A stretch of 64,000 bases of DNA from IMG/VR virus record IMGVR_UViG_3300043411_000942, positions 168,938 through 232,937 of that record; one strand, written 5' to 3'. The translations under genes and the position numbers were made by a program. The notes below the pieces were generated by a model. It worked only from the letters and a program-made list of their open reading frames with translations, searched no databases and had not been told where the DNA came from. This document shows, piece by piece, positions 16,842 through 62,968 of the stretch (the first letter of the stretch is position 1; each line of letters opens with the position of its first letter).

Positions 16842-17111
16842 ATGACTAAGAACTTCGACCTAGGTCAATTTCAGGTGCAAGGTGCTACAGGATTCGATGC
16901 CTTCTTCTCTCGCGAGGGGGCTCAGATCGTCACCCCTACTCACCGTCGAAAAGTAGCCTCTATCCAAGATCTCAAAGAGTTCATACGAGTGGGGGCAGAC
17001 CAGCTGATCCACAAGTCTGAGCGAGACTTGTGGTCAATCAAAAAAGAGGGGGATGGAAGTCTCTCGATTGAGCGCCAGTTTGACGACAACGGACAACCTC
17101 TAAAGTTTTAA
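16842..17111 (+). CDS. Hypothetical protein
   Basis: GAGGG RBS; in an operon with flanking genes. Confidence 0.7.
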   Translation: MTKNFDLGQFQVQGATGFDAFFSREGAQIVTPTHRRKVASIQDLKEFIRVGADQLIHKSERDLWSIKKEGDGSLSIERQFDDNGQPLKF

Positions 17112-17124
17112 GGTACCCACCAAG

Positions 17125-18453
17125 ATGGATGTCCGCAAGAAAGTTCGAGTAATCCTAGCACGGGAGGAAGCTGAAAACCCGCTTCCTCCAGAGGAGACGT
17201 CGTTTGTGGGTAGTGGGAAAAGAGACATTCCCCCTAAGCACAAGTTCGACCCCAAGGCTCTTAAGCCCCTCTCTAGGACCCTACTTTCTGCTAGCGTTGC
17301 GCTTGGGCACTCTGTCACAGCCTTCAAAGAGTTCACTCGAATCAAGTCATCTAGTATCTCTCCAGATGGTAAGCTTGGGGGTCGGGGTTACGTACTAGAG
17401 GTGAAGGACGTACGAGCGAAGTTGCAACAAGCTTGTGAGCTACTGTCTTCCGTGACAGATACGATGTTCGATGAGATCAACGCCCCACATTGGACTCCGA
17501 GCCTTGGGGAGTTGGATGTGAATGAGGCTGAGGATATCACGGAGCTAGTGGAGGAGGCTGGGGAGGTTCTGGAGGACCCCGAGAAAGCTGGAGAGAAGGA
17601 CCTAGACGCCATAGAGAGTAAGAATGATGGGCCTGGAGGGTCATCCAAGAGCACTCTGTGGAAAGATACAGAGAAGGGTAAGGCCTCAGAGGTACCCAAT
17701 GGGGGAGCCAAGGAGCAGGGAACTCAAGCAAGACCGTTCGGTCAAGTGAAGCAAGCCAATAGCTCTCTTCCCGTAGACACTCTTCCTGGCCCTAGGGTAA
17801 ACCACTTGGACCGTGGAGACCAGTTGGGACCAGAAGGGTCCTATAATCGAGATGAGCCCCTCGTTGAGGACGCTTGGGGGATGTCGAGCACCCTAGAGCC
17901 TATCTACGGGGAGAAGTGGGCTACCGGAGATGCCTGGGGAGAGGCTGCCATCCCTGACGGTAACGATGGCGTAGCTACAGACGCAAATGACTTTGGGCTA
18001 GGGTTTGGGGCTAAGGGTCAAGGTTCTGGGGGTTACGGAGTTACAGCTCCAGACGGGCGAGGAGTTTGGGGGCCTTCTAGTGACCTCCCTCAAGACTTGG
18101 GAGCCCCTACAACAGCCCCACAAAACGCTCCTTATCTAAATGAGAGTGGGCGGAACGTTTGGGCGTCAAGTGATGCTTGGGGTGTTGCGAAGCTTCCTAC
18201 GGACAGTCCTGTTGCACGGTCTGATTACTACGATGGGGACAAGGGTGGGAATCAGTTCAACGTTCTAACAGGAGACTCTCAGCTACCTGGACAGGATGTC
18301 TCTTTCAAAGTAGATGTCAATCTACCTAACGTGGGCTACTCTTATGAGCACCAAGACGTCCCATACGCTAAGTACGACTCTAGTACGCACTCTCATCGCC
18401 ACGATCAACAAGACTTGTGGAATGACGAAAACTTTGATAGGGTAGGTAAGTAA
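17125..18453 (+). CDS. Hypothetical virion-associated protein with acidic Gly/Pro-rich C-terminal half
   Basis: 442-aa ORF in the head module. Confidence 0.7.
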   Translation: MDVRKKVRVILAREEAENPLPPEETSFVGSGKRDIPPKHKFDPKALKPLSRTLLSASVALGHSVTAFKEFTRIKSSSISPDGKLGGRGYVLEVKDVRAKLQQACELLSSVTDTMFDEINAPHWTPSLGELDVNEAEDITELVEEAGEVLEDPEKAGEKDLDAIESKNDGPGGSSKSTLWKDTEKGKASEVPNGGAKEQGTQARPFGQVKQANSSLPVDTLPGPRVNHLDRGDQLGPEGSYNRDEPLVEDAWGMSSTLEPIYGEKWATGDAWGEAAIPDGNDGVATDANDFGLGFGAKGQGSGGYGVTAPDGRGVWGPSSDLPQDLGAPTTAPQNAPYLNESGRNVWASSDAWGVAKLPTDSPVARSDYYDGDKGGNQFNVLTGDSQLPGQDVSFKVDVNLPNVGYSYEHQDVPYAKYDSSTHSHRHDQQDLWNDENFDRVGK

Positions 18454-18454
18454 C

Positions 18455-20464
18455 ATGACTGATCTAGGTGACATTTCTGACCTCCTAAAGGAGGGTTCGG
18501 TATCGGACCTTGATTGGCTCGACGTTAACGAAAAAGACTACCGAGCTTTGGACACCCTACCTAAGCAGAATCTCGATATAGCTCCTGACTTAGAGGCTAT
18601 GTGGGCACATGAGGATAAGCCTGCAACAAACTACCTCGTCCCAAATACTGGAGCACCTCGGACCCTAAGTGACTTGAGCGAAGCTCATATCAAGAGTGCG
18701 TCGGTACCTCAAGTTGCCAAGGTGGCTCGATTTGCAATCATGCAGTCGACAAACGCCAATAAGATTGCACATGCCATCACCTCCAGGTTCGATGCAGGTA
18801 CAATTCTAGTAGCCAAAAGCGCCTTAGGTCAAGTCCTACAGGAAAAAGGCTTGCTAGGTGGGTACTACATTGCGGCATCTGACTTTGATGGGTGTAACCA
18901 AGCCGCTCAGAAGGTAGTCGCCTTTACTCGTAAGTTTGCAGGTGGGGCTAGATTCGTACTAGCCAAGGACAAGTGCCAAGGCTGCGTACACAATGCTGGC
19001 GGAGCTTGTGGTGTTTTCCAGAAGCAGTTGGTCACTGAGGTTCCCTACACGGAAGAGCTTGCAGTTGCTGTAGAGAATTCTCAGGCTTCTCAAGGTAAGC
19101 AGGCTTCTCAAGGTGTCGGATCACCTAAGGCTCGTATCCAACGTGCTCTATTGGCGAAGGATGTGAGGGTTGTAGCTGTTGAGACCCCTAAGCCCATCCT
19201 AAATCCAGCTCAGCAACTAAGGGCAGTGAAAGCTACAGGTAAGGTTCACCTACCTGTCGTTGAGAGTCAGAGAGCTAGTCTTGCTGTGGCAGACCAAGTT
19301 TGGGTACCACCTCAACCAAGTGGTAAAGTGGCGTCGACTTCGGCCACGTCTCACCACCTAAGCAAAACAGCTTTCGAGGTAAAAGCCCTTCTACAACGAG
19401 AGATGCTTAGGGGTCGAGGAGAGCAGGATTTGCTATCTGCGTTGAAGCTGTCCTTCAGTGTGGCAGATCTCAAGGCAACGAGATCGGATTGGGAGCCTCT
19501 ATTCAAAGAGGCAGGCTTCTTTGGTACCGTGTACTCCACTCAAACTGCCTTTGACGATTGCCACCAGGGGGCAGACTTTCTTGCGAAGCATAATGCTTCT
19601 GTCAAGTCGATCGTAGCTGGAGGTAAGTGCCAAGGGTGCATATACAACAAGCTAGCTCGTTGTATGCTCTACGGCCGCCCACTCGTAGCTAAGGCAGAGG
19701 ACGCCCTAACTTCTGAGGTGGTTCAGAATGTCATTTGGGAGCACAGGCTCGCGGGTCGGTTGGAGACTGGGGCGGATAAGGTTGTATGGGGAGACACTCC
19801 TAAGCAGGCACTGAAGGAGATCTACCGTCAGGCTTCAACCAAGCCAACGGTTGACACTACTAGGTATGTAGAGCAAGCGTTTAGAGGTAAGGACCACGGT
19901 CACGTAACTGCTGGCCTAACCAAGCGAGAGATCGTCAGAACGGCATCCAAGTACCTAAACGAGGGTTTGTACGGGACCCAGCTAAGAGAGGCTCTTAAGC
20001 GTCAATTTGACCCTAGAGATATCGTAGCTGCGAAGCAGGAACTGAGATCCGTCCTAGCTGAGCAGGGACTACAGGGTATATTCTACGTAGACCCCATGGT
20101 CTATGGGGACTATGCCAAAGGGTGTGATGAGGGTGCTAGGTACCATCGAGCGCGACTTGTCCCCTACGTCAAGTTGGGGTCTGGTTGCGAGAGCTGTGTA
20201 CTTCAGACTCGCGTAGGGCATTGCTCGAAGTACAACAAGCCTCTTGTTGTGGAGCCTCCATACACCGATAAGCAGGCCCAGCAGAGAGAGATCCTGGCAA
20301 CCGGGGAGTCTACAAAGGCAGACCTTGGTAGCCTCATGCACAATAGCCCGTCTATCTTGGCTCAGTTTGAGATGCAGGCAGGAGTAAATGAGCTGACTCT
20401 GAACCCAACTACAAGCAAGTCCACTGTAACCGTGGAGCTTGGTGGAATAGAGTTTGACCTATGA
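18455..20464 (+). CDS. Protein with three Cys4 repeats
   Basis: Three units of E.G..G..Y...C...CxxC...C....LV. Confidence 0.75.
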   Translation: MTDLGDISDLLKEGSVSDLDWLDVNEKDYRALDTLPKQNLDIAPDLEAMWAHEDKPATNYLVPNTGAPRTLSDLSEAHIKSASVPQVAKVARFAIMQSTNANKIAHAITSRFDAGTILVAKSALGQVLQEKGLLGGYYIAASDFDGCNQAAQKVVAFTRKFAGGARFVLAKDKCQGCVHNAGGACGVFQKQLVTEVPYTEELAVAVENSQASQGKQASQGVGSPKARIQRALLAKDVRVVAVETPKPILNPAQQLRAVKATGKVHLPVVESQRASLAVADQVWVPPQPSGKVASTSATSHHLSKTAFEVKALLQREMLRGRGEQDLLSALKLSFSVADLKATRSDWEPLFKEAGFFGTVYSTQTAFDDCHQGADFLAKHNASVKSIVAGGKCQGCIYNKLARCMLYGRPLVAKAEDALTSEVVQNVIWEHRLAGRLETGADKVVWGDTPKQALKEIYRQASTKPTVDTTRYVEQAFRGKDHGHVTAGLTKREIVRTASKYLNEGLYGTQLREALKRQFDPRDIVAAKQELRSVLAEQGLQGIFYVDPMVYGDYAKGCDEGARYHRARLVPYVKLGSGCESCVLQTRVGHCSKYNKPLVVEPPYTDKQAQQREILATGESTKADLGSLMHNSPSILAQFEMQAGVNELTLNPTTSKSTVTVELGGIEFDL

Positions 20465-21452: not shown

Positions 21453-24400
21453 ATGGCTCAAGATAAGAAACAGGTTGGGATTGCCAACCTCATCCGTAGT
21501 GCTGGGCACAGATCAAAGTCAACAGATAAGAACAGCAAAGCGGGGCTTCTCACGACTACGAAGAGTGGTCGTGAGATTCGCATATTCGACATTCTGACCT
21601 ATATTGAAGCCCCTTGGGGCCTCAATATGACGTTGTACCCAGTACAACGGTTCATAGTCAAGCTCTACTACAACCTACCCCTAGATGAGGTCTTACCTGA
21701 GAACGTGAATCGTCAGATTCGGGTCTCAGACATGTTCAACAGTAAGATACTGTACACCTTCACGGAGAAGGAGTACCTCCATTACCTATACAACGAGGGT
21801 CGCTGCAACATCAAAGAGCAGGACCACATGCGGAGGCAACTTACACTTCCGATAGGTCGGCGCGCGGGCAAGTGCAAGTCTCCGAAATCTTTAGTGGTTA
21901 CGTCAAAAGGCCTTTTAGAGCTTTCTGAACTAGGGGATGTTAGTGGGCCTGAGTGGCAACCCCTTACCATCACTGTCGCACAAGCTGGAGGGCGTCAGGC
22001 ACAATCGTCTCACTTCTACAATAACGGGGTAAGTCAAACCCGTAAGATTAAATTACGCTGTGGCATTGAGGACGAAAGCACTCCCAACCATAGAGTAATG
22101 ATACTAAGTAAAGACGGTGTTGTTGATTGGAAGTGCATGGGGGATGTCCAAGTAGGGGACTATGTAGCGGTCAGTAGAGGTACGGATCTTTGGCCAACTG
22201 TCATGTTCCCCGTACCTAAGGCAAACTTGTGGTCTCTCCCAGATGTAGTTGATGAGGACTTTGGGTTATTTCTAGGGTACTTGGTTGGGGACGGAACCTG
22301 GGGGCAAGCTTCGTACTTAGAGCTTACAGGTTTGGAGGCTCAGGTTCGTAGATTCTCTCAGATTGCATCAAAAGTTTTAGGGCACCCTGGTCGTTGCTAC
22401 CCAGCAATAGGATCTGATAATGGTTGGCGTTGGAGGTTTGACGGGGTGGGCGTAGGGGTTAACGGGCCAGCTAGAGAAGTTAGAGGTGTCTTGCATGACC
22501 TTGGATTTAACCTCGACGTAGAACGAGACAAGAAACGAGTCCCTTTCTCCATTAGAAGGTCCCCTAAGTCTGTTGTTTGTGCGTTTCTTCGTGGGCTATT
22601 TGAGACTGATGGGTGTTCGGAAGACTCTGGTCGAATTATTACACTCTCCTCATCTAGCTTTGAACTTGCCCGTGAAGTCCAACTGCTGTTGTTGAACTTA
22701 GGGGTGATTACGCATATTGGGTCGAAGTGGAACGCTAAGTACAAAAAGCACTACGCCATCCTTTCAATAAGGGGGGCGGAGTCTCGGGCAATTTTCTGCG
22801 AGCAGATCGGGTTTGACTCTGACAGAAAACAAGGACCCCTCCTAGAGAAGGTAGCTCAGCAAAAGGTAAGAGCTGACAACAAGTCAGACACCGAAGCTAT
22901 CCCCAACCAATTTGATTGGTTACAATCCCTACTAGGCCTTATCCCTAAGCGGAATGCTTCTGCTGGCAAACCTGGGTGGGGGCGAAGCCTTCTACGCCAA
23001 GAGTTAGGTAATGCTATCAAACCAGGGTCCTCTGAGGACCTTAGTTACCCCAGATTACGTAAGGCTCTTGTTGTAGCGGGGAACTTAGGCGCTGAGGGTC
23101 CAGTTGTAGACCACTTCGAGGAGTTGCTGCGGCTCAATTACTTTTACGACCCAATTGTCTCGATAGAGGAGGGAGAAGCTCAGGTTTACGACTTGACCGT
23201 GCCAGACGGGGAGGCGTTTGTCGCCAATGGTATGGTCAACCATAACACAACTCTCTCAGCAATTTTCGCTAGTTACGAGTTGTACCGTCTCCTTTCTCTG
23301 CATGATCCGCAGGAGTACTACGGACTCCCGAACGGAAACCGCATACAAATCATTAGCGTTGCTACCGACAAGGACCAAGCAGGGCTGTTGTTCAATGACG
23401 TGACCGCGCACATGGCTAAGTGCGAGTTCTTCAAGCCGTACATTGCCAACAACACGCTATCCTACGTTCAGTTGAGAACCCCTAGTGACATAGAAAAATA
23501 CGGACCAACCAACAGGACGACAGACGGCAAGTTTACGTCCTTCAACGGCAAGGCTTCAATCCGCGTAACCTTCAAAGCTAGTATCTCAAAGGGCCTTCGT
23601 GGAGCTGGTAACGTAGTCATCATCCTAGACGAGATGGCTCACTTCCAGGCTAATGGATCTAGCTCTGCGAAGGACATCTACGACGCAATCACTCCCTCCG
23701 CAGCTGCCTTCTCTCAGAAGGACTTGAACACTGGGTTGCCGATCAATGGTTCAGAGACCGAATCTGAGGCTAGGATCATCGGTATCTCCTCCCCCTTGAA
23801 TAAGGCAGGTAAGTTCTACGAGCTGTTTCACCTTGGCATGAGTCGAGGTGAAGGTTCGGAGAACATGCTTGTCATTCAAGCTCCGACTTGGGAGGTGAAC
23901 CCTACCGTACCTACGAGCTACTATAGGGCAAAGTACCATGAGGACCCTACGGTTTTCATGACAGAGCATGGGGCTCTATTCTCTGACCGTGTACGAGGTT
24001 GGATCGAGCGTGAGCAGGATCTTACGTCCTGTATACGCTCAGACCTACGCCCAAGGTCTTACGGGCCGGTCCGCTACCCGCATCAGATGGGTCTTGACGT
24101 GGGTATGGTAGGGGACGGGACGACTGTAGCCATTACTCACTGCGAGGGTCAAAACGTCATTCTAGACTACCACGAGGCGTGGTACGCAGGAGTGTCGTGG
24201 AAGGAATCGAACCCTCACCTCACTGCCCCTCTAGTAGACTACGCCAAGATGCTAGAGACGGTAGAGCGGTTGGACTTTGATGAGATTGCTAATTGGATCG
24301 TCACGTTATCCAAGAAATTCTACCTGACGTCTGGGATCTTCGATAGGTGGAACGGGCTACCCTTAGAGCAAGCGCTGCACAAAAAGGGGCTCAAGCAATT

Positions 24401-24812
24401 CAAGAGTGAGTTCTTCACCCGAGACGACCGAAGTCGAATGTTTCAGGCCATGAAGCTCATGTTGTTCGATCATCGTATTGTCCTGTACGATTGGCCGATA
24501 ACAGCGGATGGGAAGGCTAAGCACAGCCCCCTGATTGAAGAGCTGTTGAGTCTGCAAGCCACTCAGATGGCTAAGAACCAGATCCTAGTGGAGGCCCCCA
24601 AGATCCTTGGGGCGCACGATGACGTTTCAGATGCGTTGGTACGTGCCGTGTGGCTCTCGTTAGAGCAAGTCTCCAACCAAAAGTCTACGGCTCGACCTGA
24701 GGGAAGTAGTAGCCTCGCTCGTGGGTCGTCATTACAAGGGTACCAAGTACGCAGGGCCCGTAACCATGGGGTGTTGCTAGATCGTAACGTGCGAGGGTTA
24801 CGTCGGCGATAA
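21453..24812 (+). CDS. terL: Terminase large subunit containing an intein (about 661 aa after splicing)
   Basis: LYPVQ, GRRAGK/TT Walker A split by the intein, IILDEMAHF Walker B, ISSP, GLDVG and HDDVSDA nuclease motifs. Confidence 0.92.
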   Translation: MAQDKKQVGIANLIRSAGHRSKSTDKNSKAGLLTTTKSGREIRIFDILTYIEAPWGLNMTLYPVQRFIVKLYYNLPLDEVLPENVNRQIRVSDMFNSKILYTFTEKEYLHYLYNEGRCNIKEQDHMRRQLTLPIGRRAGKCKSPKSLVVTSKGLLELSELGDVSGPEWQPLTITVAQAGGRQAQSSHFYNNGVSQTRKIKLRCGIEDESTPNHRVMILSKDGVVDWKCMGDVQVGDYVAVSRGTDLWPTVMFPVPKANLWSLPDVVDEDFGLFLGYLVGDGTWGQASYLELTGLEAQVRRFSQIASKVLGHPGRCYPAIGSDNGWRWRFDGVGVGVNGPAREVRGVLHDLGFNLDVERDKKRVPFSIRRSPKSVVCAFLRGLFETDGCSEDSGRIITLSSSSFELAREVQLLLLNLGVITHIGSKWNAKYKKHYAILSIRGAESRAIFCEQIGFDSDRKQGPLLEKVAQQKVRADNKSDTEAIPNQFDWLQSLLGLIPKRNASAGKPGWGRSLLRQELGNAIKPGSSEDLSYPRLRKALVVAGNLGAEGPVVDHFEELLRLNYFYDPIVSIEEGEAQVYDLTVPDGEAFVANGMVNHNTTLSAIFASYELYRLLSLHDPQEYYGLPNGNRIQIISVATDKDQAGLLFNDVTAHMAKCEFFKPYIANNTLSYVQLRTPSDIEKYGPTNRTTDGKFTSFNGKASIRVTFKASISKGLRGAGNVVIILDEMAHFQANGSSSAKDIYDAITPSAAAFSQKDLNTGLPINGSETESEARIIGISSPLNKAGKFYELFHLGMSRGEGSENMLVIQAPTWEVNPTVPTSYYRAKYHEDPTVFMTEHGALFSDRVRGWIEREQDLTSCIRSDLRPRSYGPVRYPHQMGLDVGMVGDGTTVAITHCEGQNVILDYHEAWYAGVSWKESNPHLTAPLVDYAKMLETVERLDFDEIANWIVTLSKKFYLTSGIFDRWNGLPLEQALHKKGLKQFKSEFFTRDDRSRMFQAMKLMLFDHRIVLYDWPITADGKAKHSPLIEELLSLQATQMAKNQILVEAPKILGAHDDVSDALVRAVWLSLEQVSNQKSTARPEGSSSLARGSSLQGYQVRRARNHGVLLDRNVRGLRRR
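21873..23246 (+). mobile_element. Contiguous intein (458 aa) with LAGLIDADG homing endonuclease
   Basis: Starts CKSPKSLV, block B TPNHRV, LGYLVGDG and FLRGLFETDG motifs, ends VYDLTV...FVANGMVNHN followed by Thr. Confidence 0.95.
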
Positions 24813-28060: not shown

Positions 28061-28510
28061 ATGAAAACCATAGACAGAATGACAGCTGCTGAGTTGTGCG
28101 TAGAGTCAACTCGACTACGAGGTAGTTTGGTTACCTCCATTGAGCAGTTGCGTGGATTGTACGAGCTTCTCCAACGGAAGGCTAAGTTGGAGCTACGTGA
28201 GGTTGCAACCACTACCAGAAGTAAAACCGCACATGACCCCATGGAGACGGCTAGGGTACATCTTGCGATTGCTTCTGCTGGGCAAAGATTCACGGGTATG
28301 GTGCTGCATGCAACTCGTAGGTTAGGGGCATTCGACCGAACATTGAAACGTGATAAAGTCGCCCAAGATCTACACCCACAAGACCGACCAGCCCCTCAAA
28401 AAGCTAAAGCTGCCCCTAAGAGTGCAGGGAAGGACCCAATCCTTCAACAGGTGTTGTCCTTACCTACTGTAGTTGACGACTTAGATGAGTTGTATGGAGA
28501 TGCTACCTAA
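28061..28510 (+). CDS. Hypothetical protein
   Basis: ORF coupled to the downstream gene by a TAATG overlap. Confidence 0.65.
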   Translation: MKTIDRMTAAELCVESTRLRGSLVTSIEQLRGLYELLQRKAKLELREVATTTRSKTAHDPMETARVHLAIASAGQRFTGMVLHATRRLGAFDRTLKRDKVAQDLHPQDRPAPQKAKAAPKSAGKDPILQQVLSLPTVVDDLDELYGDAT

Positions 28511-30297
28511 TGTCCACGTTCACCAACACTCCTAGCTTTAAGTCCACGACTATAGCCGTTAGTCCGTCTCGTAAGGTATACAGCCCTTACGTATCTCAGA
28601 GCAGTAAGATGTCGAACCTTACCGACAAGGAACGCGCTGCGAGAAAGCTTACGAAGTTAGGTAGTTTCGGGGGAGGTGGAATGAACACCTCGGTATCAAG
28701 TCAATCCCCCTTCTTTAGCGCTCAACTATCGACTGACTTCCTTGAGCTTCCGCAAAACTTACGTGAGAGGCGAGAGCTATTCCGGCACTTCTATGACTCT
28801 GACCCCATTGTAGGTCAGGCCATTGATCTACACACGGATCTTCCCCTCTCCAAGATTCGTCTTGCGAAGCCCACTCCTAGGACCTGTCCAAGTCGATTTA
28901 AGAGTCCAGAGGACTACGCAAACTACATTCTAGCGTTTTTCAATAGGATGGTAAAGCGGGTCAAGCTATTTCAGCGGTTGATTACGGCTACTCACCACTA
29001 CCACCTCGATGGGAATGTCTTCATCTTTGCAGAGGATGGTACCGTAGAGGTTCCAGCTGAGGTGGGGCAGACTACGGTAAAGCAGGCAAGTGCAGTCCTA
29101 GCGGATGACGGCACAACCAAAGAGGTGGTTACCGAAGAATCGGTAGACTATGAGGATAGGGAGGACAGGGAGTTAGCCTACTACCAGCGACACTACAAGG
29201 GTTGGGACAAGATCATCATTCTTCCAATCGATCAGGTTGCGGTTCGATCCATGACATACACGGATAAGGTCAAGTTGAGTCTGATCCCATCCGATAGAGA
29301 TAGGGCCCTTATTACCCAGGCGAGTGCTGGGGATGAGGAGGCTATGGACATGGTGCAGGAGATCCCACCTGAGGTTAGAGATTACATCGAGACTGGCAAA
29401 CTCATCCCCCTGGGTACAGACCCTGACGAAGGTTCGTTTTGCTACCACCTGAAGTCTCGGGCAGGTTCGGGGGAGGAGTTGGGGGCGAGCATCCTAAATC
29501 GTTGCCTACGCGACCTGATGTACAGGGAGAAGCTTCGACAAGCCCAGACTCAAATCGCATCTAGAGCTATGACCCCGAAGCGGCTCGTGTGGGGCGAGAA
29601 CCTTTCTGAGGGGGACACTGAAGACCTTCGAGAGCAAGTAGACCTAGCGCTTGTAGACCCAGACTACTCGATTGTCACCAACTACGAAGTGCATTGGGAG
29701 GAGATAGGGGCGAGAGACCGACTCCTAGACCTATCGGGTGAGTACGAGATTACCGATAAGCACTTGTATGCCGGACTAGGAGTCACAGAAAGTATCCTAA
29801 CTGGCGAAAGCACCTTCTCTGGAGACCGTGTAAAGCTGGAAGTCCTCAACACAAAGTATGTCCTCTTTCGAGAGGTCATTCAAGAGTATGTAGAGGAGAA
29901 CCTATTCAAGCCAGTTGCTAGACGTAAGGGGTTCGTTGAACTTGATGAGTGGGGGGAGGAGGAGGTAGTACTCTTCCCTCGGCTATCCTTTACTCGCCTA
30001 GCTCTACGCGATAGCCAGGACACCTTTGACGCCCTCCTTAATCTGTACCAGAAGGGGAGCTTGTCCATCGATGTCATTCTGGAGCTGTTCAACATTGACC
30101 CAGTAGACACCAAGGAAAAGATTGAGCGTGACATGTTCACGGTCAACGATGCCCTCTTCAATGAGGTTATTCGAGGAATCTACGGTGAGGTTGGTAGGGG
30201 TATTGCAGAGAAGACTGACGTTATGGCAAAGATTGCGGCATACCTCAAGTTGGAAGTAACCCCAGAGGCTCCTGCTGAAGCTGAGGGTAGGTTCTAA
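28510..30297 (+). CDS. Portal protein
   Basis: 595 aa, between TerL and protease/MCP; FY..DPIVGQAIDLH, G.SIL.RCLR, I..GLGV.-type segments typical of portals. Confidence 0.7.
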   Translation: MSTFTNTPSFKSTTIAVSPSRKVYSPYVSQSSKMSNLTDKERAARKLTKLGSFGGGGMNTSVSSQSPFFSAQLSTDFLELPQNLRERRELFRHFYDSDPIVGQAIDLHTDLPLSKIRLAKPTPRTCPSRFKSPEDYANYILAFFNRMVKRVKLFQRLITATHHYHLDGNVFIFAEDGTVEVPAEVGQTTVKQASAVLADDGTTKEVVTEESVDYEDREDRELAYYQRHYKGWDKIIILPIDQVAVRSMTYTDKVKLSLIPSDRDRALITQASAGDEEAMDMVQEIPPEVRDYIETGKLIPLGTDPDEGSFCYHLKSRAGSGEELGASILNRCLRDLMYREKLRQAQTQIASRAMTPKRLVWGENLSEGDTEDLREQVDLALVDPDYSIVTNYEVHWEEIGARDRLLDLSGEYEITDKHLYAGLGVTESILTGESTFSGDRVKLEVLNTKYVLFREVIQEYVEENLFKPVARRKGFVELDEWGEEEVVLFPRLSFTRLALRDSQDTFDALLNLYQKGSLSIDVILELFNIDPVDTKEKIERDMFTVNDALFNEVIRGIYGEVGRGIAEKTDVMAKIAAYLKLEVTPEAPAEAEGRF

Positions 30298-30327
30298 TAC
30301 TTGGTTTGTTACTTAGGTAAGGCGACC

Positions 30328-33300: not shown

Positions 33301-33930
33301 CTTATTTTGAGTGCGGCTAGGTCTTGGTTAAGGTCACCCGTACTTTCCTCTTCGATTGAGGGGATGGTACCAGACACCAGGTTTCGGGCTGCACTTGATC
33401 TTGCAATCCGTGAGGTCAGTGACGGTAGGTACAGTGGAGCTATTACAGCGAACCTGTACAACCAACTCTTGGCTAAGTTAGCTAACTCAACGGATCAACC
33501 GCTGGGTACAATTCGCGAGGCTTCAACCTCAACTAAAGGAACTAGGACCATGATTAAGTTTGCCAAGTCGGATGCCAACACCATTCTAGCTCGTCTTGAC
33601 CGCGTTGCGGCTGCCATCCAAGAAAACCATGCAAAGTGGGGGATGGGCTTCGACGTCGCGAAGGAGCTAGTCAACGACCTCGATAAGACCGCAGACGAGA
33701 TTGAGAAGGCCTCGTTTGGGGAGGAGTCTCTTATGACTCGTCAAGTTGAAGTGCTCAAGCAAGCAAAGGTGCTTCAGCAGGACAAGGACGAGAAGTACAT
33801 GGGTACTTACAATGCCCCATCCGCTGTTCATCAGTCGGATAGGGACGAGAAGTACATGAGCCTCTACGATGATGATCAGACTCAGGCAGTTGTGAGTGGC
33901 AAGTCCTCTGTTGGTCGCCCTCTTACCTGA
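30328..33930 (+). CDS. Large modular head-associated protein with likely in-frame internal starts
   Basis: ATG 30328; Pro/Glu-rich linkers; in-frame ATG 33550 preceded by AAAGGA/AGGA. Confidence 0.7.
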   Translation: MRIFGTKTHVELENEEAERLVRLTPKVKPPRRDKRREDMRTERDPDIDGDPDIKRDQDRSLNYKTVGGAARVAARFLLARDELVSVRNKETGHVVNVSEETLKGEDASKYEKLEDEESQKDPEQELASQGEALRDLAKDNPKLQAMIKDLTNPKSDLGGLAEGNPSLPASTVLKNVKIPEGLKTLGDLVKSLRAPKVSPKVKSKAPKEKGPKPAEKAPEGKDPRWDESGESVEPEKASTPPEAGKPTEPSGVPEAPTAPEAPETPPEAPSDGAEPDPFPEPKKPQAPKFPPTDARSYPPPKRPPPTRQEELEAMDALRESGLPPSVRSTLSLLHPADLKTLLASYSKFQSLPVYGSLKSEIQNARGGYVSKPEDVQTLPDDFGSSKKKKTEGGPEDSEEDSQAEAVQQHRMAVMAASLASQVRVTKMMTSSGVPSYLAGKLAYFTLTTASMPPEKQMEVARQAAQTAFTQAATGFSGLPEKDDRFGSFIDKAKRRLLGDQERKDFISAMDHLDPYTQMAAVAHLQGEDYRAASDKFLGDQAKNPISGYDPPKVIKDKLQAATKMIREAGRDYPLAARVALVDPATVFRVRARESLSGMPPEKKAELTEALLESDADDYEKADAEYTKHDLPKFEKAYAKYEQELKRWESDKADFESDLDYRESAKPFEKEPPQPPLKPEPPRKPIGYEKVRPPAEHDQKAIQQELDSARAKHTPHEDTHGDSEHSDDEHGEPKQSWKERAKSLSAKAKATLQASPKAVKQFIEDDSFRRKTLMDAHAVLLKAPEKIAKRALDTAKHEVKEFKEAGQGIASVLRGGKMTSHQKKAFKTVATHMAISVAAAALTASGPLAIAGAVGKGMVKHVAMKAVANLFGHLHILEEVGHIGHGVKHLMEHLASTESPDPEEVLSNLVLAAVAKEVPKLDHDGIQSALEGEQESTEKVVASIYSSYQSSKWQMTSSNRTALYHGVEPSPQTPYSEWQQAHQRDLAPEDSALILSAARSWLRSPVLSSSIEGMVPDTRFRAALDLAIREVSDGRYSGAITANLYNQLLAKLANSTDQPLGTIREASTSTKGTRTMIKFAKSDANTILARLDRVAAAIQENHAKWGMGFDVAKELVNDLDKTADEIEKASFGEESLMTRQVEVLKQAKVLQQDKDEKYMGTYNAPSAVHQSDRDEKYMSLYDDDQTQAVVSGKSSVGRPLT

Positions 33931-57726: not shown

Positions 57727-57735
57727 GGTGTCTGC

Positions 57736-58068: not shown

Positions 58069-58122
58069 ACTTTGGACTTCGCTTGGGGTATGTGTGATGG
58101 TAACTTTTCACTAGGAGATGAG

Positions 58123-58461: not shown

Positions 58462-58476
58462 ATTCTGAAGTGAGAC

Positions 58477-58516
58477 GTAGAGGGGGAGTGAGCTAACGGC
58501 TTACTCCCCTTTCTAC
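58477..58516 (+). terminator. Stem-loop terminator
   Basis: GTAGAGGGGGAGTGAGC-TAACG-GCTTACTCCCCTTTCTAC. Confidence 0.6.
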
Positions 58517-58534
58517 TTATGTCCTGTACCAAGT

Positions 58535-59887: not shown

Positions 59888-59896
59888 ACTACTTAT
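59885..59896 (+). promoter_or_regulatory. Candidate phage late-promoter motif TAAACTACTTAT
   Basis: Copy of the recurring motif, 15 nt before ATG 59912. Confidence 0.4.
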
Positions 59897-59911
59897 CCGT
59901 TGGAGCTGAGT

Positions 59912-60490: not shown

Positions 60491-60511
60491 GGACTAAGCT
60501 GAGGTACCCTC

Positions 60512-61009
60512 TTGTCCAACCTAGCTAAAGTATACGGGAAGCCATTAGTCAAAGGGGTAGCTGCGACTCCTGAGCGGGCACTCAAGTTACTTAAGCAGGA
60601 CATCCTACAGAGGGTCCGAGCCAAGCTACTTCAGTCTACATTCTCGGACAGGGCCAAGAAGGCGTTCTCCAGGTCCTTGTCAGTCAAAATAGGCAGCTCT
60701 TCGCTTACCATCCGGTCCAGCCACCCAGCATTTATCCTCTTGTTGAGAGGTCAACGTAAAGGTCAGATGACCTGGCTCGTGAAGGCTAGGGCTCCTATTC
60801 CTATCATTACGGACACTGGAGAGCTTATTTTCCGTACAGCCTCTGCAAGGTCTATGTTGAATGGTAAGTGGATTCACCCAGGGAGGGGCCCATTCGACTT
60901 TGTGGAGAAAGCTAAAGCAGAAGCCAAGGCTAGGATTCGCAAGGGAATTATGGAAGAGATACGTAGGACTGTAGCTCAGTCCGCCAGACAGAATGGAAGA
61001 ACTAGATGA
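60512..61009 (+). CDS. Basic virion morphogenesis/tail-completion-like protein
   Basis: Arg/Lys-rich; W.HPG....FVEKA motif. Confidence 0.5.
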   Translation: MSNLAKVYGKPLVKGVAATPERALKLLKQDILQRVRAKLLQSTFSDRAKKAFSRSLSVKIGSSSLTIRSSHPAFILLLRGQRKGQMTWLVKARAPIPIITDTGELIFRTASARSMLNGKWIHPGRGPFDFVEKAKAEAKARIRKGIMEEIRRTVAQSARQNGRTR

Positions 61010-61647
61010 ACTTAGGCGATATCGTAGTGTGTGGTGTGACCGAAGACATCCTCTTGGATGACATCAAGTTTATGGTGCCCAAAGGAGAAGCTGTCACAGT
61101 GCCAGCGGACCTTGTTGTCAGGTCGACAGACTTGTACCGGCAACTATCCGTAGGGGCTATATTCCAGTTGAATAAGAACAGCCGTGGGCTCCGACCGAAC
61201 TCCCCACCAAAAGAAGAGCCCCTGGAGAGCCCTTCGCTACAGCCTGTAGTTATGGCAGCTCAGGTAGAGATTGAGGCCCTGAAGTCTGAGAATGCTCGAC
61301 TTGCAGAGGAGAACAACATCCTTCAAGAGAGGGTTTCCGTACTCACCCGAGAGGCTTCTCTACTTAAGGATTCCTTAGGTATTGGGGAGAGGTTAGACCA
61401 GATGATGGTCATGTTGAAGAACGGGGTTGCACAAGGGCCCTCCGTACTTCGCACCTCGAACCTTAACGGCGACTCATTTCCATCCTCGGAAGAGGCTCCA
61501 GTATTCATCCCATCCCAAATCAAAATGGATGATGTTGACACCTCTAGGTTGAGTACCCCTGAATCCACAGAAACTACCTCAGGAGCTGGGGTGTCTAGGG
61601 CTGCAAACGCACTACGTAAGTTGAAGGTAGAGAAGGATAAGTCATGA
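61006..61647 (+). CDS. Hypothetical coiled-coil protein
   Basis: ATGA-coupled ORF. Confidence 0.65.
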   Translation: MNLGDIVVCGVTEDILLDDIKFMVPKGEAVTVPADLVVRSTDLYRQLSVGAIFQLNKNSRGLRPNSPPKEEPLESPSLQPVVMAAQVEIEALKSENARLAEENNILQERVSVLTREASLLKDSLGIGERLDQMMVMLKNGVAQGPSVLRTSNLNGDSFPSSEEAPVFIPSQIKMDDVDTSRLSTPESTETTSGAGVSRAANALRKLKVEKDKS

Positions 61648-62291
61648 CTATTAGAGACCGCATCGCCAAGTTAGTTCAGGTCACGGCAGCAGCTGCTATC
61701 CTTTGGAAGTACGTAGACGAAGACGGCAAGGACTTCTACCTAGCAGAGAAGAAGACTGGCACCGTTCGTAGTCCTTACTCCGGGAAGAGCTTTACTGCGA
61801 AGCCTGAGAGGTCCTCTCTTGGGGATGTAAGCAAGGAGCAAAAGGAAGACGGGTCGAAGACCAAGGGCTCACTCTTCAAGTACACGGATGACGAGGGCAA
61901 CGACTTCTATCTCCCAGAGAAGAAGACCAGCACCCTAAAGAGCCCCTACTCCGGAAAGAGCGTCACCCCTAAGGCGGAGAAGTCTACGTTGAGTGACGTA
62001 GGCAAGGACCTGAAAGAGAAGATTGCAAGCTCACCCATGCAGTGGGAGCTTGCCTCGGACATCCTCGCTAAGAAGGAAGCTCACCCTGCGTTGAAGGTCC
62101 TCCAGGTCCAATACGCGAAGATTCTGGAGGGGTTGGAGGAGGCCGCTCAACGATCAGCTCGAATGAAGAAGGTGGGCGTAGGGGCTACGGAAGACCCAAC
62201 TTTTATCATGGCTCATGTGGTCCCAGAGATTCGTAAGCTTGGGGAGAAGTGTCTGCTTGTTGCTAAGCAGCTAGAGGAGAAGCTCGATTGA
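61644..62291 (+). CDS. Hypothetical protein with internal duplicated domain
   Basis: Two copies of KY.D..G.DFYL.EKKT.T..SPYSGKS.T.K.E.S.L.DV.K. Confidence 0.7.
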   Translation: MTIRDRIAKLVQVTAAAAILWKYVDEDGKDFYLAEKKTGTVRSPYSGKSFTAKPERSSLGDVSKEQKEDGSKTKGSLFKYTDDEGNDFYLPEKKTSTLKSPYSGKSVTPKAEKSTLSDVGKDLKEKIASSPMQWELASDILAKKEAHPALKVLQVQYAKILEGLEEAAQRSARMKKVGVGATEDPTFIMAHVVPEIRKLGEKCLLVAKQLEEKLD

Positions 62292-62968
62292 ACTGGAAAA
62301 CCTCAGCTGACGCTACGCAGGCGATCTGGCAAGACCCATCCTCTTACGACCCCTATACGCAGGGGCCTCCATACCTCCCAGAGAGCCCTTCACGACGTAC
62401 AGCGTCTCAGAAGGTTAGCTCTGAGTTTGGGTTGCCAGAGGCACTAGCGGCCCTTCGCGCCCTAGCTATGGTCCACCAAACGCACCATTGGCTTACTTCA
62501 GGGCCAGCCTTCTACGCAGACCACCTTCTCTTTGAGCGCCTCTACACGGATACGGTTGGTGAGATTGACAGCATCGCTGAGCGAGCTGTGGGAACTGGGG
62601 CTGCCTCTAGTTCCATCCACCCCGTGGTTCAAGCACAGCAAGTTCTGAATGTGCTTGGGACCTGGAACCTCCAAGAAGACCCTAAGTCCTATATCGCTAC
62701 CAGCCTTGTTGCGGAACGATGGGTTCTTGCTCAGTTGAAGCAAGTCGTAGCGACGATGAAGGCCACAGGCGCGCTCTCGCGTGGTACCGATAATCTACTT
62801 GCAAGTATTGAAGATAAGCACGAAGAGCACGTTTACCTTCTTTCTCAACGTAGTAAGGTGGGGCGTTGGAAAGTCCAAAGTACTGAGGCTCGTCGGGCTG
62901 AACTCGAAGTACGTGGTTGGAAGTATGTTGAAAACCCAAAACCTGCGAAGTTTGTGGTAAGGCTTTAG
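62288..62968 (+). CDS. Dps/ferritin-like protein
   Basis: HQTHHW...GP.FYADHLLFERLY.....EID.IAER and EDKHEEH.YLL, a Dps-like iron-binding pattern. Confidence 0.8.
   Translation: MNWKTSADATQAIWQDPSSYDPYTQGPPYLPESPSRRTASQKVSSEFGLPEALAALRALAMVHQTHHWLTSGPAFYADHLLFERLYTDTVGEIDSIAERAVGTGAASSSIHPVVQAQQVLNVLGTWNLQEDPKSYIATSLVAERWVLAQLKQVVATMKATGALSRGTDNLLASIEDKHEEHVYLLSQRSKVGRWKVQSTEARRAELEVRGWKYVENPKPAKFVVRL

What the first reader, a model, noticed from the sequence alone, without database searches (positions are those of the whole stretch)
16842..62968. Pervasive [KR]-[TQSV]-A motif in virion-module proteins: candidate prohead-protease processing code
Seen: KVAS (16842); KQAN (17125); KSAS, KQAS, KVAS, RQAS, RTAS (18455); KSAM (24837); KTAH (28061); RTAL, KQAK (30328); RQAA, RTAA (34816); KQAG, RTAD, KTAS twice, KQAK, KQAH, RTAS (36514); KQAS (41219); KTAM, KQAA, KTAH, KSAA, KTAR (42600); KSAR (44375); KTAD (48459); RTAS (62288). 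They often sit at domain boundaries and by eye look sparser in the replication genes. Known: T4 gp21 and phiKZ gp175 proteases cut many head proteins at short motifs ending in Glu. Inference: this phage uses a different, Ala-ending motif to process scaffold and internal proteins, so several long ORFs may be polyproteins.
Basis: partly seen in the sequence, partly recalled or inferred. Interest (0 to 1): 0.68.

Follow-up and report, generated by a model that had tools for sequence, protein, structure and literature searches.

The report
Megaphage head protease cleavage motif
A short Lys/Arg-x-Ala(-Ser/Ala) signature is over-represented in the head-assembly proteins of this roughly 0.5-Mb phage and its relatives, flanking the capsid protease and dotting the scaffold, so it is most likely that protease's cutting signal, which could be tested directly in cultivable phage G.

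Summary
In 16.8-48.8 kb, [KR]-[TQSV]-A occurs 67 times against about 31 expected (z 6.4-7). Replication genes and connector/tail genes sit at or below expectation. Only this residue order is enriched, codons vary, and Ala or Ser follows the Ala 2.6-2.7 times more often than expected.

"Pervasive" overstates it. Across the 233-kb record, three proteins carry most of the excess: 36514 (scaffold-like), 42600 and 18455. The other notable sites flank the protease core and sit at residue 16 of the major head protein.

The motif, fixed from the window, replicates in distant relatives. In Tunturi_5 the post-protease protein is the most enriched of 357. In phage G only the head-module bin is enriched. 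Across 22 head proteins from six lineages the count is 110 against 31 (z 14.7). In 84 homologous proteases the hits cluster just before and just after the catalytic core, which has the T4 gp21/herpesvirus assemblin fold (Z 9.4-9.6). Seven of eight scaffold-like proteins have a site 16-49 residues from the C-terminus.

Best reading: this is a prohead-protease recognition motif, probably cut Ala↓Ser/Ala. No cleavage data exist, and the polyprotein idea is unsupported. Confidence 0.6.

The parts
34816..36477 (+). Head maturation (prohead) protease, 553 aa. The catalytic core is aa ~46-260. A long C-terminal extension ends in a confidently folded helical domain (aa ~430-550).
   Evidence: phrog_18299 head maturation protease E 9e-11. 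AF2 core pLDDT >90. VIA-align Z 9.6 to VZV protease and 9.4 to T4 gp21. No Pfam hit.
34924..34935 (+). Protease N-flank site R-T-A-A (aa 37-40), just upstream of the catalytic core. A second nearby site, R-Q-A-A, is at aa 25-28 (34888-34899).
   Evidence: Same alignment column carries KTA-A in Tunturi_5 and phage G and TQA-S in LR745208. 68 hits in a 15-column window in 84 family members. Lies outside the confident core.
35656..35667 (+). Protease C-flank site R-T-A-D (aa 281-284), immediately after the catalytic core. Candidate self-release site.
   Evidence: A site follows the core in all four compared phages. Family hot spot across 80 sequences: K/R 74, V/A 68, Ala 75, S/D 69. Region has pLDDT <50.
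36085..36096 (+). Protease site K-S-A-L (aa 424-427), within the conserved 'LIKSAL' just before the C-terminal helical domain.
   Evidence: Motif retained in 68% of clade homologues; identity 0.80 against 0.42 in the flanks. Domain boundary from the model.
36514..37779 (+). Scaffold-like protein, 421 aa, between protease and major head protein. Sites at aa 15, 21, 88, 112, 159, 178, 364 and 370. Central Q-rich stretch almost free of Lys/Arg. Conserved C-terminal tail.
   Evidence: 8 sites vs 1.2 expected, p 4e-5. All 52 clade homologues carry at least 3 sites, mean 7.2 vs 1.6. No PHROG or Pfam hit; the scaffold role is inferred from position and composition.
36775..36786 (+). Scaffold site K-T-A-S (aa 88-91), followed in relatives by an acidic insert of variable length.
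   Evidence: Motif in 90% of 51 homologues. It is rebuilt as RQAS or KQAS where the flanks differ.
37621..37632 (+). Scaffold site R-T-A-S (aa 370-373), 49 residues from the C-terminus and upstream of the conserved tail. Candidate maturation (release) site. A neighbouring K-Q-A-H is at aa 364.
   Evidence: Motif in 96% of homologues; KKAS in LR745208. Seven of eight lineages have a site 16-49 aa from the scaffold C-terminus.
38561..39433 (+). Major head protein, 290 aa, with site K-T-A-A at aa 16-19 (38606-38617). Candidate 18-residue N-terminal propeptide.
   Evidence: phrog_2522 E 1e-51. KTA-AGR in the window and LR745208, KSA-AGR in Tunturi_5. KSAA or KTAG at residue 19 in L132 and L130. 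Phage G has RVA-L shifted by 6 residues.
42600..44366 (+). Unknown 588-aa protein with 12 sites, placed in linkers between repeated helical units. Candidate internal head protein.
   Evidence: 12 vs 2.5 expected, p 1e-5, the top protein in the 233-kb record. Exact 240-bp x2 tandem repeat at 43503-43983. Clade homologues average 5.0 vs 2.1.
18455..20464 (+). Unknown 669-aa protein with 10 sites lying between three Cys-rich (C-x-x-C...C) modules. Candidate internal head protein.
   Evidence: 10 vs 2.5 expected, p 3e-4; sequence layout. Only homologue found is in LR745208.
30301..33930 (+). Large 1209-aa protein between portal and protease with 7 sites. It sits where Tunturi_5 has its motif-rich 'DNA ejection protein' gp328.
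   Evidence: 7 sites; family ratio 1.4, so only weakly enriched. The syntenic pre-protease proteins in L131-L133 and Tunturi_5 are enriched.
28510..30297 (+). Portal protein (context). Two sites: one conserved inside the core, one not conserved.
   Evidence: phrog_16240 E 7e-24; conservation.
21453..24812 (+). Large terminase, 1119 aa (context, marking the start of the head module).
   Evidence: phrog_17415 E 9e-29 over aa 558-841.

Best explanation
The window is the head-morphogenesis end of a roughly 0.5-Mb phage of the phage G / Tunturi_5 lineage. Its prohead protease (34816-36477) has the assemblin / T4 gp21 fold and recognises a short linear motif, [K/R]-[T>V,Q,S...]-A-[S/A/D/G].

Proposed mechanism (inferred, not shown): inside the assembled prohead the protease
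(i) frees its own catalytic core by cutting the sites that bracket it (aa 37 and 281, possibly 424);
(ii) cuts the scaffold-like protein 36514 at several N-terminal sites and at the conserved RTA-S 49 residues from its C-terminus, detaching it from a conserved C-terminal tail that presumably holds it to the shell;
(iii) trims about 18 residues from the major head protein;
(iv) processes large internal proteins (42600, 18455, perhaps 30301) at linker sites.

The scissile bond is most likely Ala↓(Ser/Ala), with K/R at P3 and Thr/Val/Gln at P2. This has the same three-position geometry as the A-X-E↓(S) motif of SPN3US gp245, but with P1 Ala as in herpesvirus assemblin.

Shown here: the enrichment, its order-specificity, its localisation, its conservation, its replication in other lineages, and the protease fold. 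Inferred: that the protease is the reader of the motif, which bond is cut, and which individual sites are used.
For: Enrichment and specificity in the window:
- 67 vs 31, z 6.4-7.0; other permutations and single-position variants are flat.
- 51 vs 17.9 (z 8.1) in ten head proteins, while A.E, [LI].E and [SAG].E are not enriched.
- The +1 residue is Ala 2.6x or Ser 2.7x (p 2e-6, 3e-5); no other flank position is informative.
- In the whole 233-kb record only head-module proteins are significant; connector/tail genes are below expectation.

Independent replication with the motif fixed in advance:
- Tunturi_5 gp332 (post-protease) is the top of 357 proteins (10 vs 1.5, p 4e-6).
- In phage G only the 0-20 kb head bin of 25 bins is enriched (27 vs 10.1, p 8e-6).
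- Four further metagenomic lineages show it in the pre- and post-protease proteins.
- Pooled, 22 proteins give 110 vs 30.9 (z 14.7) and 46 vs 5.7 with A/S at +1 (z 17.3).
- These syntenic proteins share no BLAST-detectable similarity with the window's.

Link to the protease:
- Sites bracket the catalytic core in the window, LR745208, Tunturi_5 and phage G.
- In 84 family members there are 68 and 58 hits in two 15-column windows, against almost none in the ~195-residue core.
- C-flank consensus across 80 sequences: K/R 74, V/A 68, Ala 75, S/D 69.
- The flanks are low-confidence, probably flexible, in the AF2 model.

Fold: Z 9.6 VZV protease, 9.4 T4 gp21; the top 37 rows are all assemblins or gp21.

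Conserved islands: scaffold sites 88, 159 and 370, protease 424, major head protein 16.

Scaffold layout: seven of eight lineages have a site 16-49 aa from the C-terminus, before a conserved tail.

Precedent: SPN3US gp245 self-cleaves, cuts major capsid protein, portal and ejection proteins at a three-residue motif with Ser preferred at P1', and has multiple motif copies in propeptides (PMC10052503).
Against: - No experimental terminus or peptide from any member of the lineage could be obtained. The phage G structure/proteomics paper is not held and no supplements are held.
- Many window sites are not conserved in clade homologues: 41219, 33967, 28510-191, and most of 42600. Only a subset can be functional.
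- Some conserved occurrences are probably structural: RRVAELCGH inside the protease core, RQA in the portal core, RVA at aa 178 of the major head protein.
- The motif was chosen post hoc in the window. The replication set was chosen by synteny after I had seen some of the counts.
- Homologues are phylogenetically related, so counts across them are not independent.
- The middle position is broader than TQSV in other lineages.
- In mycobacteriophage Cali, which has the same protease family, the flanking sites are absent and enrichment is modest.
- Catalytic residues were not mapped in 3D.
- The complex prediction gave no verdict.
Confidence: 0.6

Rival explanations
1. The motif is a non-proteolytic short linear motif. 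For example, it could be a docking or capsid-targeting peptide through which scaffold, protease and internal proteins bind the inner shell, the portal or each other, with no cleavage at the motif.
For: Localisation to head-interior proteins and conservation fit a binding motif equally well. Some conserved instances are followed by further conserved residues (K-x-A-D-P-Y-x-M-N-Q in the scaffold N-terminus), as in an interaction surface. A separate R-V-A-x-R-F string recurs in three head-region proteins.
Against: A docking motif does not explain why sites bracket the protease's catalytic core on both sides in flexible segments across 84 homologues. It also does not explain one site near the N-terminus of the major head protein, or the small-residue preference exactly at +1 with no other flank preference, which is typical of a scissile-bond neighbourhood. 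Multiple copies per scaffold match known protease substrates.
Confidence: 0.17
2. The protease does read the motif, but the cut is after the basic residue (K/R at P1, as I recall for HK97 gp5 Lys103/Ser104). Thr/Val/Gln-Ala-Ser would then occupy the primed side.
For: K/R is present in 93% of C-flank sites. HK97-type proteases share this fold (own knowledge). Sequence statistics cannot place the scissile bond.
Against: Ala and the residue after it are the positions kept when the basic residue is lost or shifted: TQA-S in the LR745208 protease, and GPKAI / GANAA variants at scaffold site 112. Informative positions end right after the small +1 residue, matching the P3-P2-P1-P1' pattern documented for SPN3US and the Ala/Ser junction of assemblins (own knowledge).
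Confidence: 0.12
3. There is no function. The excess is a by-product of composition, helical or low-complexity sequence, internal repeats and post hoc motif choice.
For: The motif was picked by eye. 42600 contains an exact duplication that double-counts sites. Scaffold-like proteins are A/K/Q-rich. Many sites are not conserved.
Against: Local 30-residue shuffles give the same z. Mirror and permuted motifs are flat. The motif replicates in phage G (30% GC) and Tunturi_5 with the motif fixed beforehand, and only in head modules. Conserved islands sit in hypervariable sequence. The two hot spots around the protease core are precisely positioned.
Confidence: 0.05
4. The motif marks sites for another enzyme: a host protease, or a modification of the Lys/Arg or of the Ser that follows.
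For: Nothing specific. The basic residue plus Ser/Thr context is compatible with many enzymes.
Against: Hosts of the lineage range from Bacillota (phage G) to Acidobacteriota (Tunturi_5), so a shared host enzyme is unlikely. No candidate modifying enzyme lies in the head module. The Ala, not the Lys or Ser, is the most conserved position.
Confidence: 0.04

Closest known systems
SPN3US gp245 / phiKZ gp175 prohead proteases and their A-X-E (S/A/G-X-E) motif
   Same: A giant-phage prohead protease with a three-residue P3-P2-P1 motif, permissive P2 and Ser favoured at P1'. It self-cleaves. Substrates include major capsid protein, portal and abundant internal proteins, with several motif copies per propeptide (PMC10052503). 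The layout inferred here is the same.
   Different: P1 there is Glu and P3 is Ala. Here the invariant residue is Ala and the upstream determinant is Lys/Arg, and Glu-ending motifs are not enriched. There is no detectable sequence relationship between the proteases. Cleavage is experimentally shown there and only inferred here.
Herpesvirus assemblin with its release (R) and maturation (M) sites
   Same: Same protease fold (Z 7-9.6 to VZV, PRV, HSV, HCMV, KSHV and EBV proteases). Cleavage at an Ala/Ser junction, one site just after the protease domain and one about 25 residues from the scaffold C-terminus that frees the scaffold from the capsid protein (established knowledge, not tested here). 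The window has a site right after the core (aa 281) and a 96%-conserved RTA-S 49 residues from the scaffold C-terminus.
   Different: Assemblin prefers an aliphatic residue at P3 ((V/L/I)-X-A/S), whereas here P3 is basic. Protease and scaffold are separate genes in the window, not a nested or fused pair, although mycobacteriophage Cali gp93 looks like a fusion. The protease here carries a Cys/His knuckle insert. Only about 10% sequence identity.
T4 gp21 prohead protease
   Same: Structural match Z 9.4, 132 residues at 2.7 A. Processes scaffold core, internal proteins and major capsid protein at a short motif and trims itself (own knowledge).
   Different: T4 cuts after Glu in (L/I)-x-E (own knowledge); [LI].E is not enriched here. 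No Pfam or sequence-level match.
HK97 gp4 protease
   Same: Same fold superfamily. Gene sits between portal and major capsid protein. His...Ser spacing of about 50 residues (H127/S178 here; HK97 values from memory).
   Different: HK97's scaffold is the N-terminal delta domain of the capsid protein, cut after Lys103 (own knowledge). Here there is a separate scaffold-like protein and only a short propeptide on the major head protein. No Pfam S78 hit.

Membership tests
Assemblin-fold prohead protease (T4 gp21 / herpesvirus protease superfamily) | Characteristic beta-barrel protease fold | tested here: met
   AF2 core pLDDT >90. VIA-align Z 9.6 (VZV, 113 aa, 2.5 A), 9.4 (T4 gp21, 132 aa, 2.7 A), 9.1 (PRV). 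The top 37 rows are all this family; the next unrelated fold is at Z 6 or below. Foldseek E-values alone were weak (2.7e-3).
Assemblin-fold prohead protease (T4 gp21 / herpesvirus protease superfamily) | Conserved catalytic His and Ser (plus a third residue) in the right order | tested here: inconclusive
   H127 is invariant, and S178 (in L-S-M-G-C) and H204 are nearly invariant across 63 sequences, with spacings of 51 and 26 residues. All are kept in phage G and Tunturi_5. Their spatial proximity in the model was not measured.
Assemblin-fold prohead protease (T4 gp21 / herpesvirus protease superfamily) | Gene located in the head module between portal and major capsid protein | tested here: met
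   Portal 28510, protease 34816, scaffold-like 36514, major head protein 38561. Same order in Tunturi_5, phage G and L130-L133.
Assemblin-fold prohead protease (T4 gp21 / herpesvirus protease superfamily) | Match to a curated sequence model (Pfam S78/U35, S77/U9, S21) | tested here: not met
   No Pfam hit at E 0.01. None of the 120 listed homologues has a protease Pfam label. No PDB sequence hit. Only phrog_18299 'head maturation protease' at E 9e-11. So it is a member at fold level, in a sequence family not yet curated.
Prohead-protease substrate motif (as for T4, phiKZ, SPN3US) | Motif enriched in prohead-interior proteins and not in other phage proteins | tested here: met
   window and whole record; six other lineages.
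Prohead-protease substrate motif (as for T4, phiKZ, SPN3US) | Motif present at self-processing positions of the protease | tested here: met
   Sites bracket the core in four phages and in 84 homologues. This shows sequence presence only; cleavage is not shown.
Prohead-protease substrate motif (as for T4, phiKZ, SPN3US) | Mature virion protein termini begin immediately after the motif | not testable with these tools
   No proteomic or N-terminal data could be reached.
Glu-ending T4 / phiKZ-type cleavage motif | Excess of (L/I)-x-E or (S/A/G)-x-E in head proteins | tested here: not met
   A.E z -2.9, [LI].E z 1.3, [SAG].E z -1.7 in ten head proteins.
   Profiles of protease aa 285-415 and 415-553 find no separate gene in Tunturi_5, phage G, L130-L133 or Cali. 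18455, 30301, 36514 and 42600 have no orthologues to compare. The repeats of 42600 are bounded by sites, which is suggestive only.
Herpesvirus-like R-site / M-site scaffold release | One site directly after the protease domain and one near the scaffold C-terminus upstream of a conserved tail | tested here: met
   C-flank hot spot. Last site is 16-49 aa from the C-terminus in seven of eight scaffold-like proteins, before an L-x-x-L-F/W-type tail. The function of the tail was not tested.
Herpesvirus-like R-site / M-site scaffold release | Protease fused in frame to the scaffold | tested here: not met
   Separate ORFs in the window (34816-36477 and 36514-37779). A fusion-like 1286-aa protein exists in mycobacteriophage Cali.

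The most novel reading that the evidence does not exclude
A large, globally distributed clade of phages of roughly 0.3-0.5 Mb, including phage G, Tunturi_5 and at least 580 IMG/VR contigs, matures its capsids with an assemblin-fold protease that has herpesvirus-like Ala↓Ser specificity and a herpesvirus-like pair of sites: a release site after the protease core and a maturation site just upstream of the scaffold's C-terminal capsid-binding tail. That would make it the closest known phage counterpart of herpesvirus scaffold release, and would give a sequence rule for finding scaffolds and packaged internal proteins in uncultured large phages, whose sequences are otherwise unrecognisable.
Probability: 0.35. 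Interest if true: 0.72.

Novelty: new variant of a known kind. Interest (0 to 1): 0.55.

Why it matters
Prohead proteases with short recognition motifs are well known. The experimentally defined giant-phage examples all end in Glu, and nothing is documented for the phage G lineage, which builds some of the largest known capsids (T=52 is reported for phage G).

If the motif is the protease's code:
- It gives a testable map of which proteins are trimmed, degraded or packaged in these heads.
- It offers a way to recognise scaffolds and internal proteins that evolve too fast for homology search. Motif density survived where sequence similarity did not.
- It provides a possible specificity-level link between phage and herpesvirus maturation proteases.
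- It flags mis-annotations. The protease is 'hypothetical' in hundreds of actinophage records, and the protease-bearing Cali gp93 is labelled tape measure.

Phage G and Tunturi_5 are cultivable, so the prediction can be checked with existing methods.

Tried and rejected
- Megablast of 30.3-44.4 kb against phage records: no match.
- Pfam on ten head proteins: nothing useful.
- Profile searches of PDB sequences with both protease alignments: only spurious zinc-finger hits.
- First AF2 run of the full-length protease with a shallow alignment: poor (pLDDT 51). It was replaced by the core model built on a deeper alignment.
- Foldseek alone: only weak E-values. VIA-align was needed.
- Complex prediction of the protease core with scaffold aa 345-400: no verdict, so not evidence either way.
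- Literature: no cleavage motif for phage G or Tunturi_5 was found. The phage G capsid/proteomics paper, the HK97 protease-domain paper and the prohead/herpes protease homology paper are not held. No supplements are held for the 2025 phage G paper. One search was spoiled because 'assemblin' matched 'assembling'.
- DNA-level motif: rejected because codons are diverse.
- Glu-ending motifs: rejected.
- Composition or helix-bias artefact: rejected by permutation and local-shuffle controls.
- N-terminal bias of sites, checked by hand from the list: about 13 of 67 sites fall in the first 40 residues, roughly the share of residues there, so no bias.
- Split-gene support for polyproteins: none.
No sequence was re-sent in altered form.
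- The large representative-protein search, the sequencing-run tools and read laying were not used. Genetic code 11 was used throughout.

Full report
WHAT THE WINDOW IS. The window is the last 64 kb of a 232,937-bp IMG/VR viral record estimated at 49% complete, so the phage is roughly 0.5 Mb. Almost all genes are on the + strand. PHROG profiles identify the following:
- 1-15 kb: recombination and replication genes, namely a RuvC-like resolvase, a UvsX-like recombinase, exonucleases, a clamp loader and an HNH endonuclease.
- 21453-24812: a long large terminase.
- 28510-30297: portal.
- 34816-36477: a 553-aa head maturation protease.
- 38561-39433: major head protein.
- About 52.5-53.4 kb: a head-closure (connector) protein. 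62288-62968 is a DNA-binding protein.
The major head protein is 83% identical to that of the uncultured 485-kb phage LR745208, 47% to Tunturiibacter phage Tunturi_5 (309 kb), 37% to Bacillus phage G (498 kb) and about 29% to cluster C mycobacteriophages. At least 580 IMG/VR contigs carry a major head protein 92-100% identical, while their scaffold-like and protease proteins have diverged to about 50%.

CHECK OF THE OBSERVATION.
- In proteins of 16.8-48.8 kb, [KR]-[TQSV]-A occurs 67 times. Per-protein shuffles expect 31.0 (z 6.6) and shuffles within 30-residue windows expect 30.1 (z 7.0).
- The replication block has 10 against 11.3, and the 48.8-64 kb block 6 against 11.2.
- An unbiased tripeptide scan puts KQA (13 vs 3.1) and KTA (12 vs 3.7) among the most enriched abundant tripeptides.
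- Of the six orders of the three residue classes only K/R-x-A is enriched; the others run from z -0.4 to 2.1.
- Replacing the Ala with G, S, L, E or V, or the base with an acid, or the middle class with its complement, removes the signal.
- Adding Ser at +1 gives 14 against 2.2 (z 7.8).
- Codons at the sites are diverse (53 distinct 9-mers among 67), so the signal is at protein level.

WHERE THE SIGNAL SITS. A scan of all 407 ORFs of the 233-kb record shows the excess is concentrated, not pervasive. The top three proteins are 42600 (12 vs 2.5, p 1e-5), 36514 (8 vs 1.2, p 4e-5) and 18455 (10 vs 2.5, p 3e-4). The other 170 kb has a ratio near 1, and window 51-61 kb (connector and tail) has 3 against 7.6. 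Two of the sites in 42600 are copies made by an exact 240-bp tandem duplication at 43503-43983. This is a property of the head-interior proteins, not of the virion module as a whole.

CONSERVATION. I aligned the clade homologues of thirteen head-module proteins. Many sites are not conserved: those in 41219 and 33967, portal site 191, and most of 42600. A subset are conserved islands.
- In the scaffold-like protein 36514, KTA-[S/A] at residue 88 is kept in 90% of 51 homologues. It is followed by an acidic insert of variable length, and it is rebuilt as RQAS or KQAS where the flanks differ.
- KQA-G at residue 159 lies in hypervariable Q/D/E-rich sequence (identity 0.61 against 0.16 in the flanks).
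- RTA-S at residue 370 is kept in 96% and is KKAS in LR745208.
- The protease's 'LIKSAL' at residue 424 is kept in 68%, against 0.42 flank identity.
- All 52 members of the 36514 family carry at least three sites (mean 7.2 against 1.6 expected).

INDEPENDENT REPLICATION. With the motif fixed from the window, I scanned complete genomes of two cultured, distant relatives.
- In Tunturi_5 the most enriched of 357 proteins is gp332, the protein immediately after the head maturation protease (10 vs 1.5, p 4e-6). The protease and the 'DNA ejection protein' gp328 also rank high, and the head-module bin has 34 against 14.9.
- In phage G (30% GC) only one of 25 bins of 20 kb is enriched: 0-20 kb, which holds terminase, portal, protease gp19 and gp21 (27 vs 10.1, p 8e-6).
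- Four further metagenomic lineages, reached through distant protease homologues, show the same pattern. The protein after the protease and the large protein before it are enriched (for example L132: 10 vs 1.5 and 11 vs 2.7). Sheath, decoration and tail-fibre genes are mostly at or below expectation.
- Pooling 22 protease-adjacent proteins of these six lineages gives 110 against 30.9 (z 14.7). The other five residue orders run from z -1.7 to 2.9. With Ala or Ser at +1 the count is 46 against 5.7 (z 17.3).
- The window's motif-rich proteins have no BLAST-detectable orthologues in Tunturi_5 or phage G, so motif density has outlived sequence similarity.
- One caveat: I chose the pooled set by synteny after having seen some of the counts, and the lineages are related.

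SHAPE OF THE MOTIF. Over 109 sites from three phages, the only informative flanking position is the residue after the Ala: Ala 2.6x (p 2e-6) and Ser 2.7x (p 3e-5). Bulky hydrophobics and Pro are depleted there. The middle position prefers Thr (about 5x), then Val and Gln. It tolerates many residues and disfavours Gly, Pro, Asp and His.

LINK TO THE PROTEASE. A four-way alignment of the proteases places a site in one column just upstream of the catalytic core: window RTA-A, Tunturi_5 KTA-A, phage G KTA-A, LR745208 TQA-S. One or two sites follow within about 10-30 residues after the core in all four. A search with the catalytic core alone found 133 metagenomic homologues, mostly about 290 aa and none with a Pfam label. 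In an alignment of 84 of them:
- motif hits concentrate in two 15-column windows, 68 before the core (consensus AKTA-SVD) and 58 after it (consensus FAKVA-SR);
- the ~195-residue core has almost none, apart from one structural RRVAELCGH;
- at the C-flank hot spot, of 80 sequences, 74 have K/R, 68 have V/A, 75 have Ala and 69 have S/D at successive positions.
With this deeper alignment AF2 gives a confident core (pLDDT >90 for aa ~46-260) and low-confidence flanks that contain the sites. Structural alignment gives Z 9.6 to VZV protease, 9.4 to T4 gp21 and 9.1 to pseudorabies protease. The top 37 rows are all herpesvirus assemblins or gp21. H127 is invariant and S178 and H204 are nearly invariant, with an assemblin-like order and spacing. 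I could not measure their proximity in the model.

OTHER SUBSTRATE-LIKE FEATURES.
- The major head protein carries KTA-AGR at residues 16-21 (window and LR745208) and KSA-AGR in Tunturi_5. L130 and L132 have a site at residue 19. Phage G has RVA-L shifted by six residues.
- The scaffold-like proteins of eight lineages share a layout: a cluster of sites in the first ~200 residues, a central spacer nearly free of Lys/Arg, and, in seven of the eight, a last site 16-49 residues from the C-terminus, directly before a conserved hydrophobic-acidic tail.
- In 42600 the sites lie in the linkers between repeated helical units. In 18455 they lie between three Cys-rich modules.

HOW IT MOST LIKELY WORKS. 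The economical explanation is that [K/R]-[T/V/Q/S...]-A-[S/A/D/G] is the recognition motif of this lineage's prohead protease. The protease would free its own core, dismantle the scaffold, detach the scaffold from a C-terminal tail, trim a short propeptide from the major head protein, and process internal proteins.

This follows the documented behaviour of SPN3US gp245. That protease cuts after A-X-E at P3-P2-P1 with Ser preferred at P1', cuts itself, and has several motif copies in substrate propeptides (PMC10052503).

I place the scissile bond after the Ala for two reasons. The Ala and the small residue after it are what survive when the basic residue is lost or shifted. The informative positions also stop right there.

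From established knowledge, not tested here: herpesvirus assemblins cut Ala/Ser junctions at a release site after the protease domain and at a maturation site near the scaffold C-terminus. The layout found here resembles that, with a basic residue at P3 where assemblin has an aliphatic one. Glu-ending motifs of the T4/phiKZ type are not enriched.

WHAT IS NOT SHOWN. No cleavage has been observed. The phage G proteomics papers either are not held or have no peptide-level data held. The complex prediction gave no verdict. The polyprotein suggestion has no support: no segment beyond a site is separately encoded in relatives.

The motif also has limits. In mycobacteriophage Cali the same protease domain forms the N-terminus of the 1286-aa gp93, just upstream of the major head protein. 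There the flanking sites are absent and enrichment is modest (gp83 10 vs 2.7; gp92 8 vs 2.9), often with Gly after the Ala.

RIVALS. A non-proteolytic docking motif explains the localisation and conservation, but not the bracketing of the protease core or the +1 small-residue rule. A cut after the basic residue cannot be excluded from sequence. Pure bias is largely excluded by the permutation, local-shuffle and replication controls. A host enzyme is unlikely given hosts in different phyla.

VERDICT. The interpretation as a protease code is the best-supported reading (confidence about 0.6), with Ala↓Ser/Ala as the probable bond (about 0.4). The polyprotein extension is unsupported. In kind, this is a new variant of a known mechanism. 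I found no description of it in the searchable literature, but one relevant phage G paper could not be read.

PROCEDURAL NOTES. All translations used genetic code 11. The reads tools and the large representative-protein search were not used. No step needed referral.

Noticed in passing
window 43503-43983 (inside gene 42600-44366): Exact 240-bp tandem duplication (2.0 copies, 100% identical) encoding an 80-aa repeat. It is either a very recent duplication or an assembly artefact. Homologues in the clade range from 240 to 1033 aa, which suggests the number of repeats varies.
   Followed up: partly
window 21453-24812: The large terminase is 1119 aa. Terminase homology covers only about aa 558-1069. 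The N-terminal half hits a helicase PHROG and phrog_9666, the same family that also hits the UvsX-like recombinase at 957-2207. This could be a fusion or an unrecognised inserted element.
   Followed up: no
window 34816-36477, aa 181-227: The protease core carries invariant C188, C191 and C202 and nearly invariant H204, C181 and C227, a zinc-knuckle-like insert. It is conserved in LR745208, Tunturi_5, phage G, Cali and 60+ metagenomic homologues. I do not know of this in other prohead proteases. H204 could instead be the third catalytic residue.
   Followed up: partly
window 36085-36477 (protease aa ~430-553): In this clade the protease has a ~290-aa C-terminal extension ending in a confidently predicted helical domain (pLDDT 80-88). 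The ~290-aa proteases of Tunturi_5-like phages lack it, and no separately encoded homologue was found there.
   Followed up: partly
window 18455 aa 89; 20461 aa 9; 30301 aa 80: An R/K-V-A-(A)-R-F-(L/A) string occurs in only three proteins of the 233-kb record, all in the head region. It is conserved in the 30301 family as an amphipathic R-[VI]-x-x-R-F segment. It could be a shared targeting or docking peptide.
   Followed up: partly
L134 15352-19212 (mycobacteriophage Cali gp93): The 1286-aa protein annotated 'tape measure' has this protease domain at its N-terminus and sits directly upstream of the major head protein. It looks like a protease-scaffold fusion that has been mis-annotated. The protease is 'hypothetical' in about 240 actinophage and jumbo-phage records.
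   Followed up: partly
window 1-15900 and 48800-64000: Outside the head block the Lys form of the motif (K-[TQSV]-A) is under-represented (3 observed vs 11.0 expected, z -2.4). This may be chance, or avoidance of the motif in non-substrates.
   Followed up: no
window 18455-20464: The protein has three similar Cys-rich modules (C-Q-G-C...C, C-Q-G-C...C and C-E-S-C...C around aa 173-185, 391-403 and 578-590), which suggest repeated metal-binding domains. Its only detectable homologue is in LR745208.
   Followed up: no
window 14199-15299, 26918-27538, 54338-55762; L131 10874-12757; L130 and L132 GIY-YIG genes: Homing-type endonuclease genes (HNH, GIY-YIG, DUF723) are scattered through the head modules of this lineage. 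One sits between protease and scaffold in L131, and one lies among the connector genes of the window.
   Followed up: no
window 36514-37779, aa ~180-300: The scaffold-like protein has a ~120-residue stretch made almost entirely of Gln, Ala, Val, Gly and Met with no Lys or Arg. Relatives replace it with equally long acidic or Ala/Glu-rich spacers, so what is conserved is a spacer free of basic residues, and so of sites, not its sequence.
   Followed up: partly
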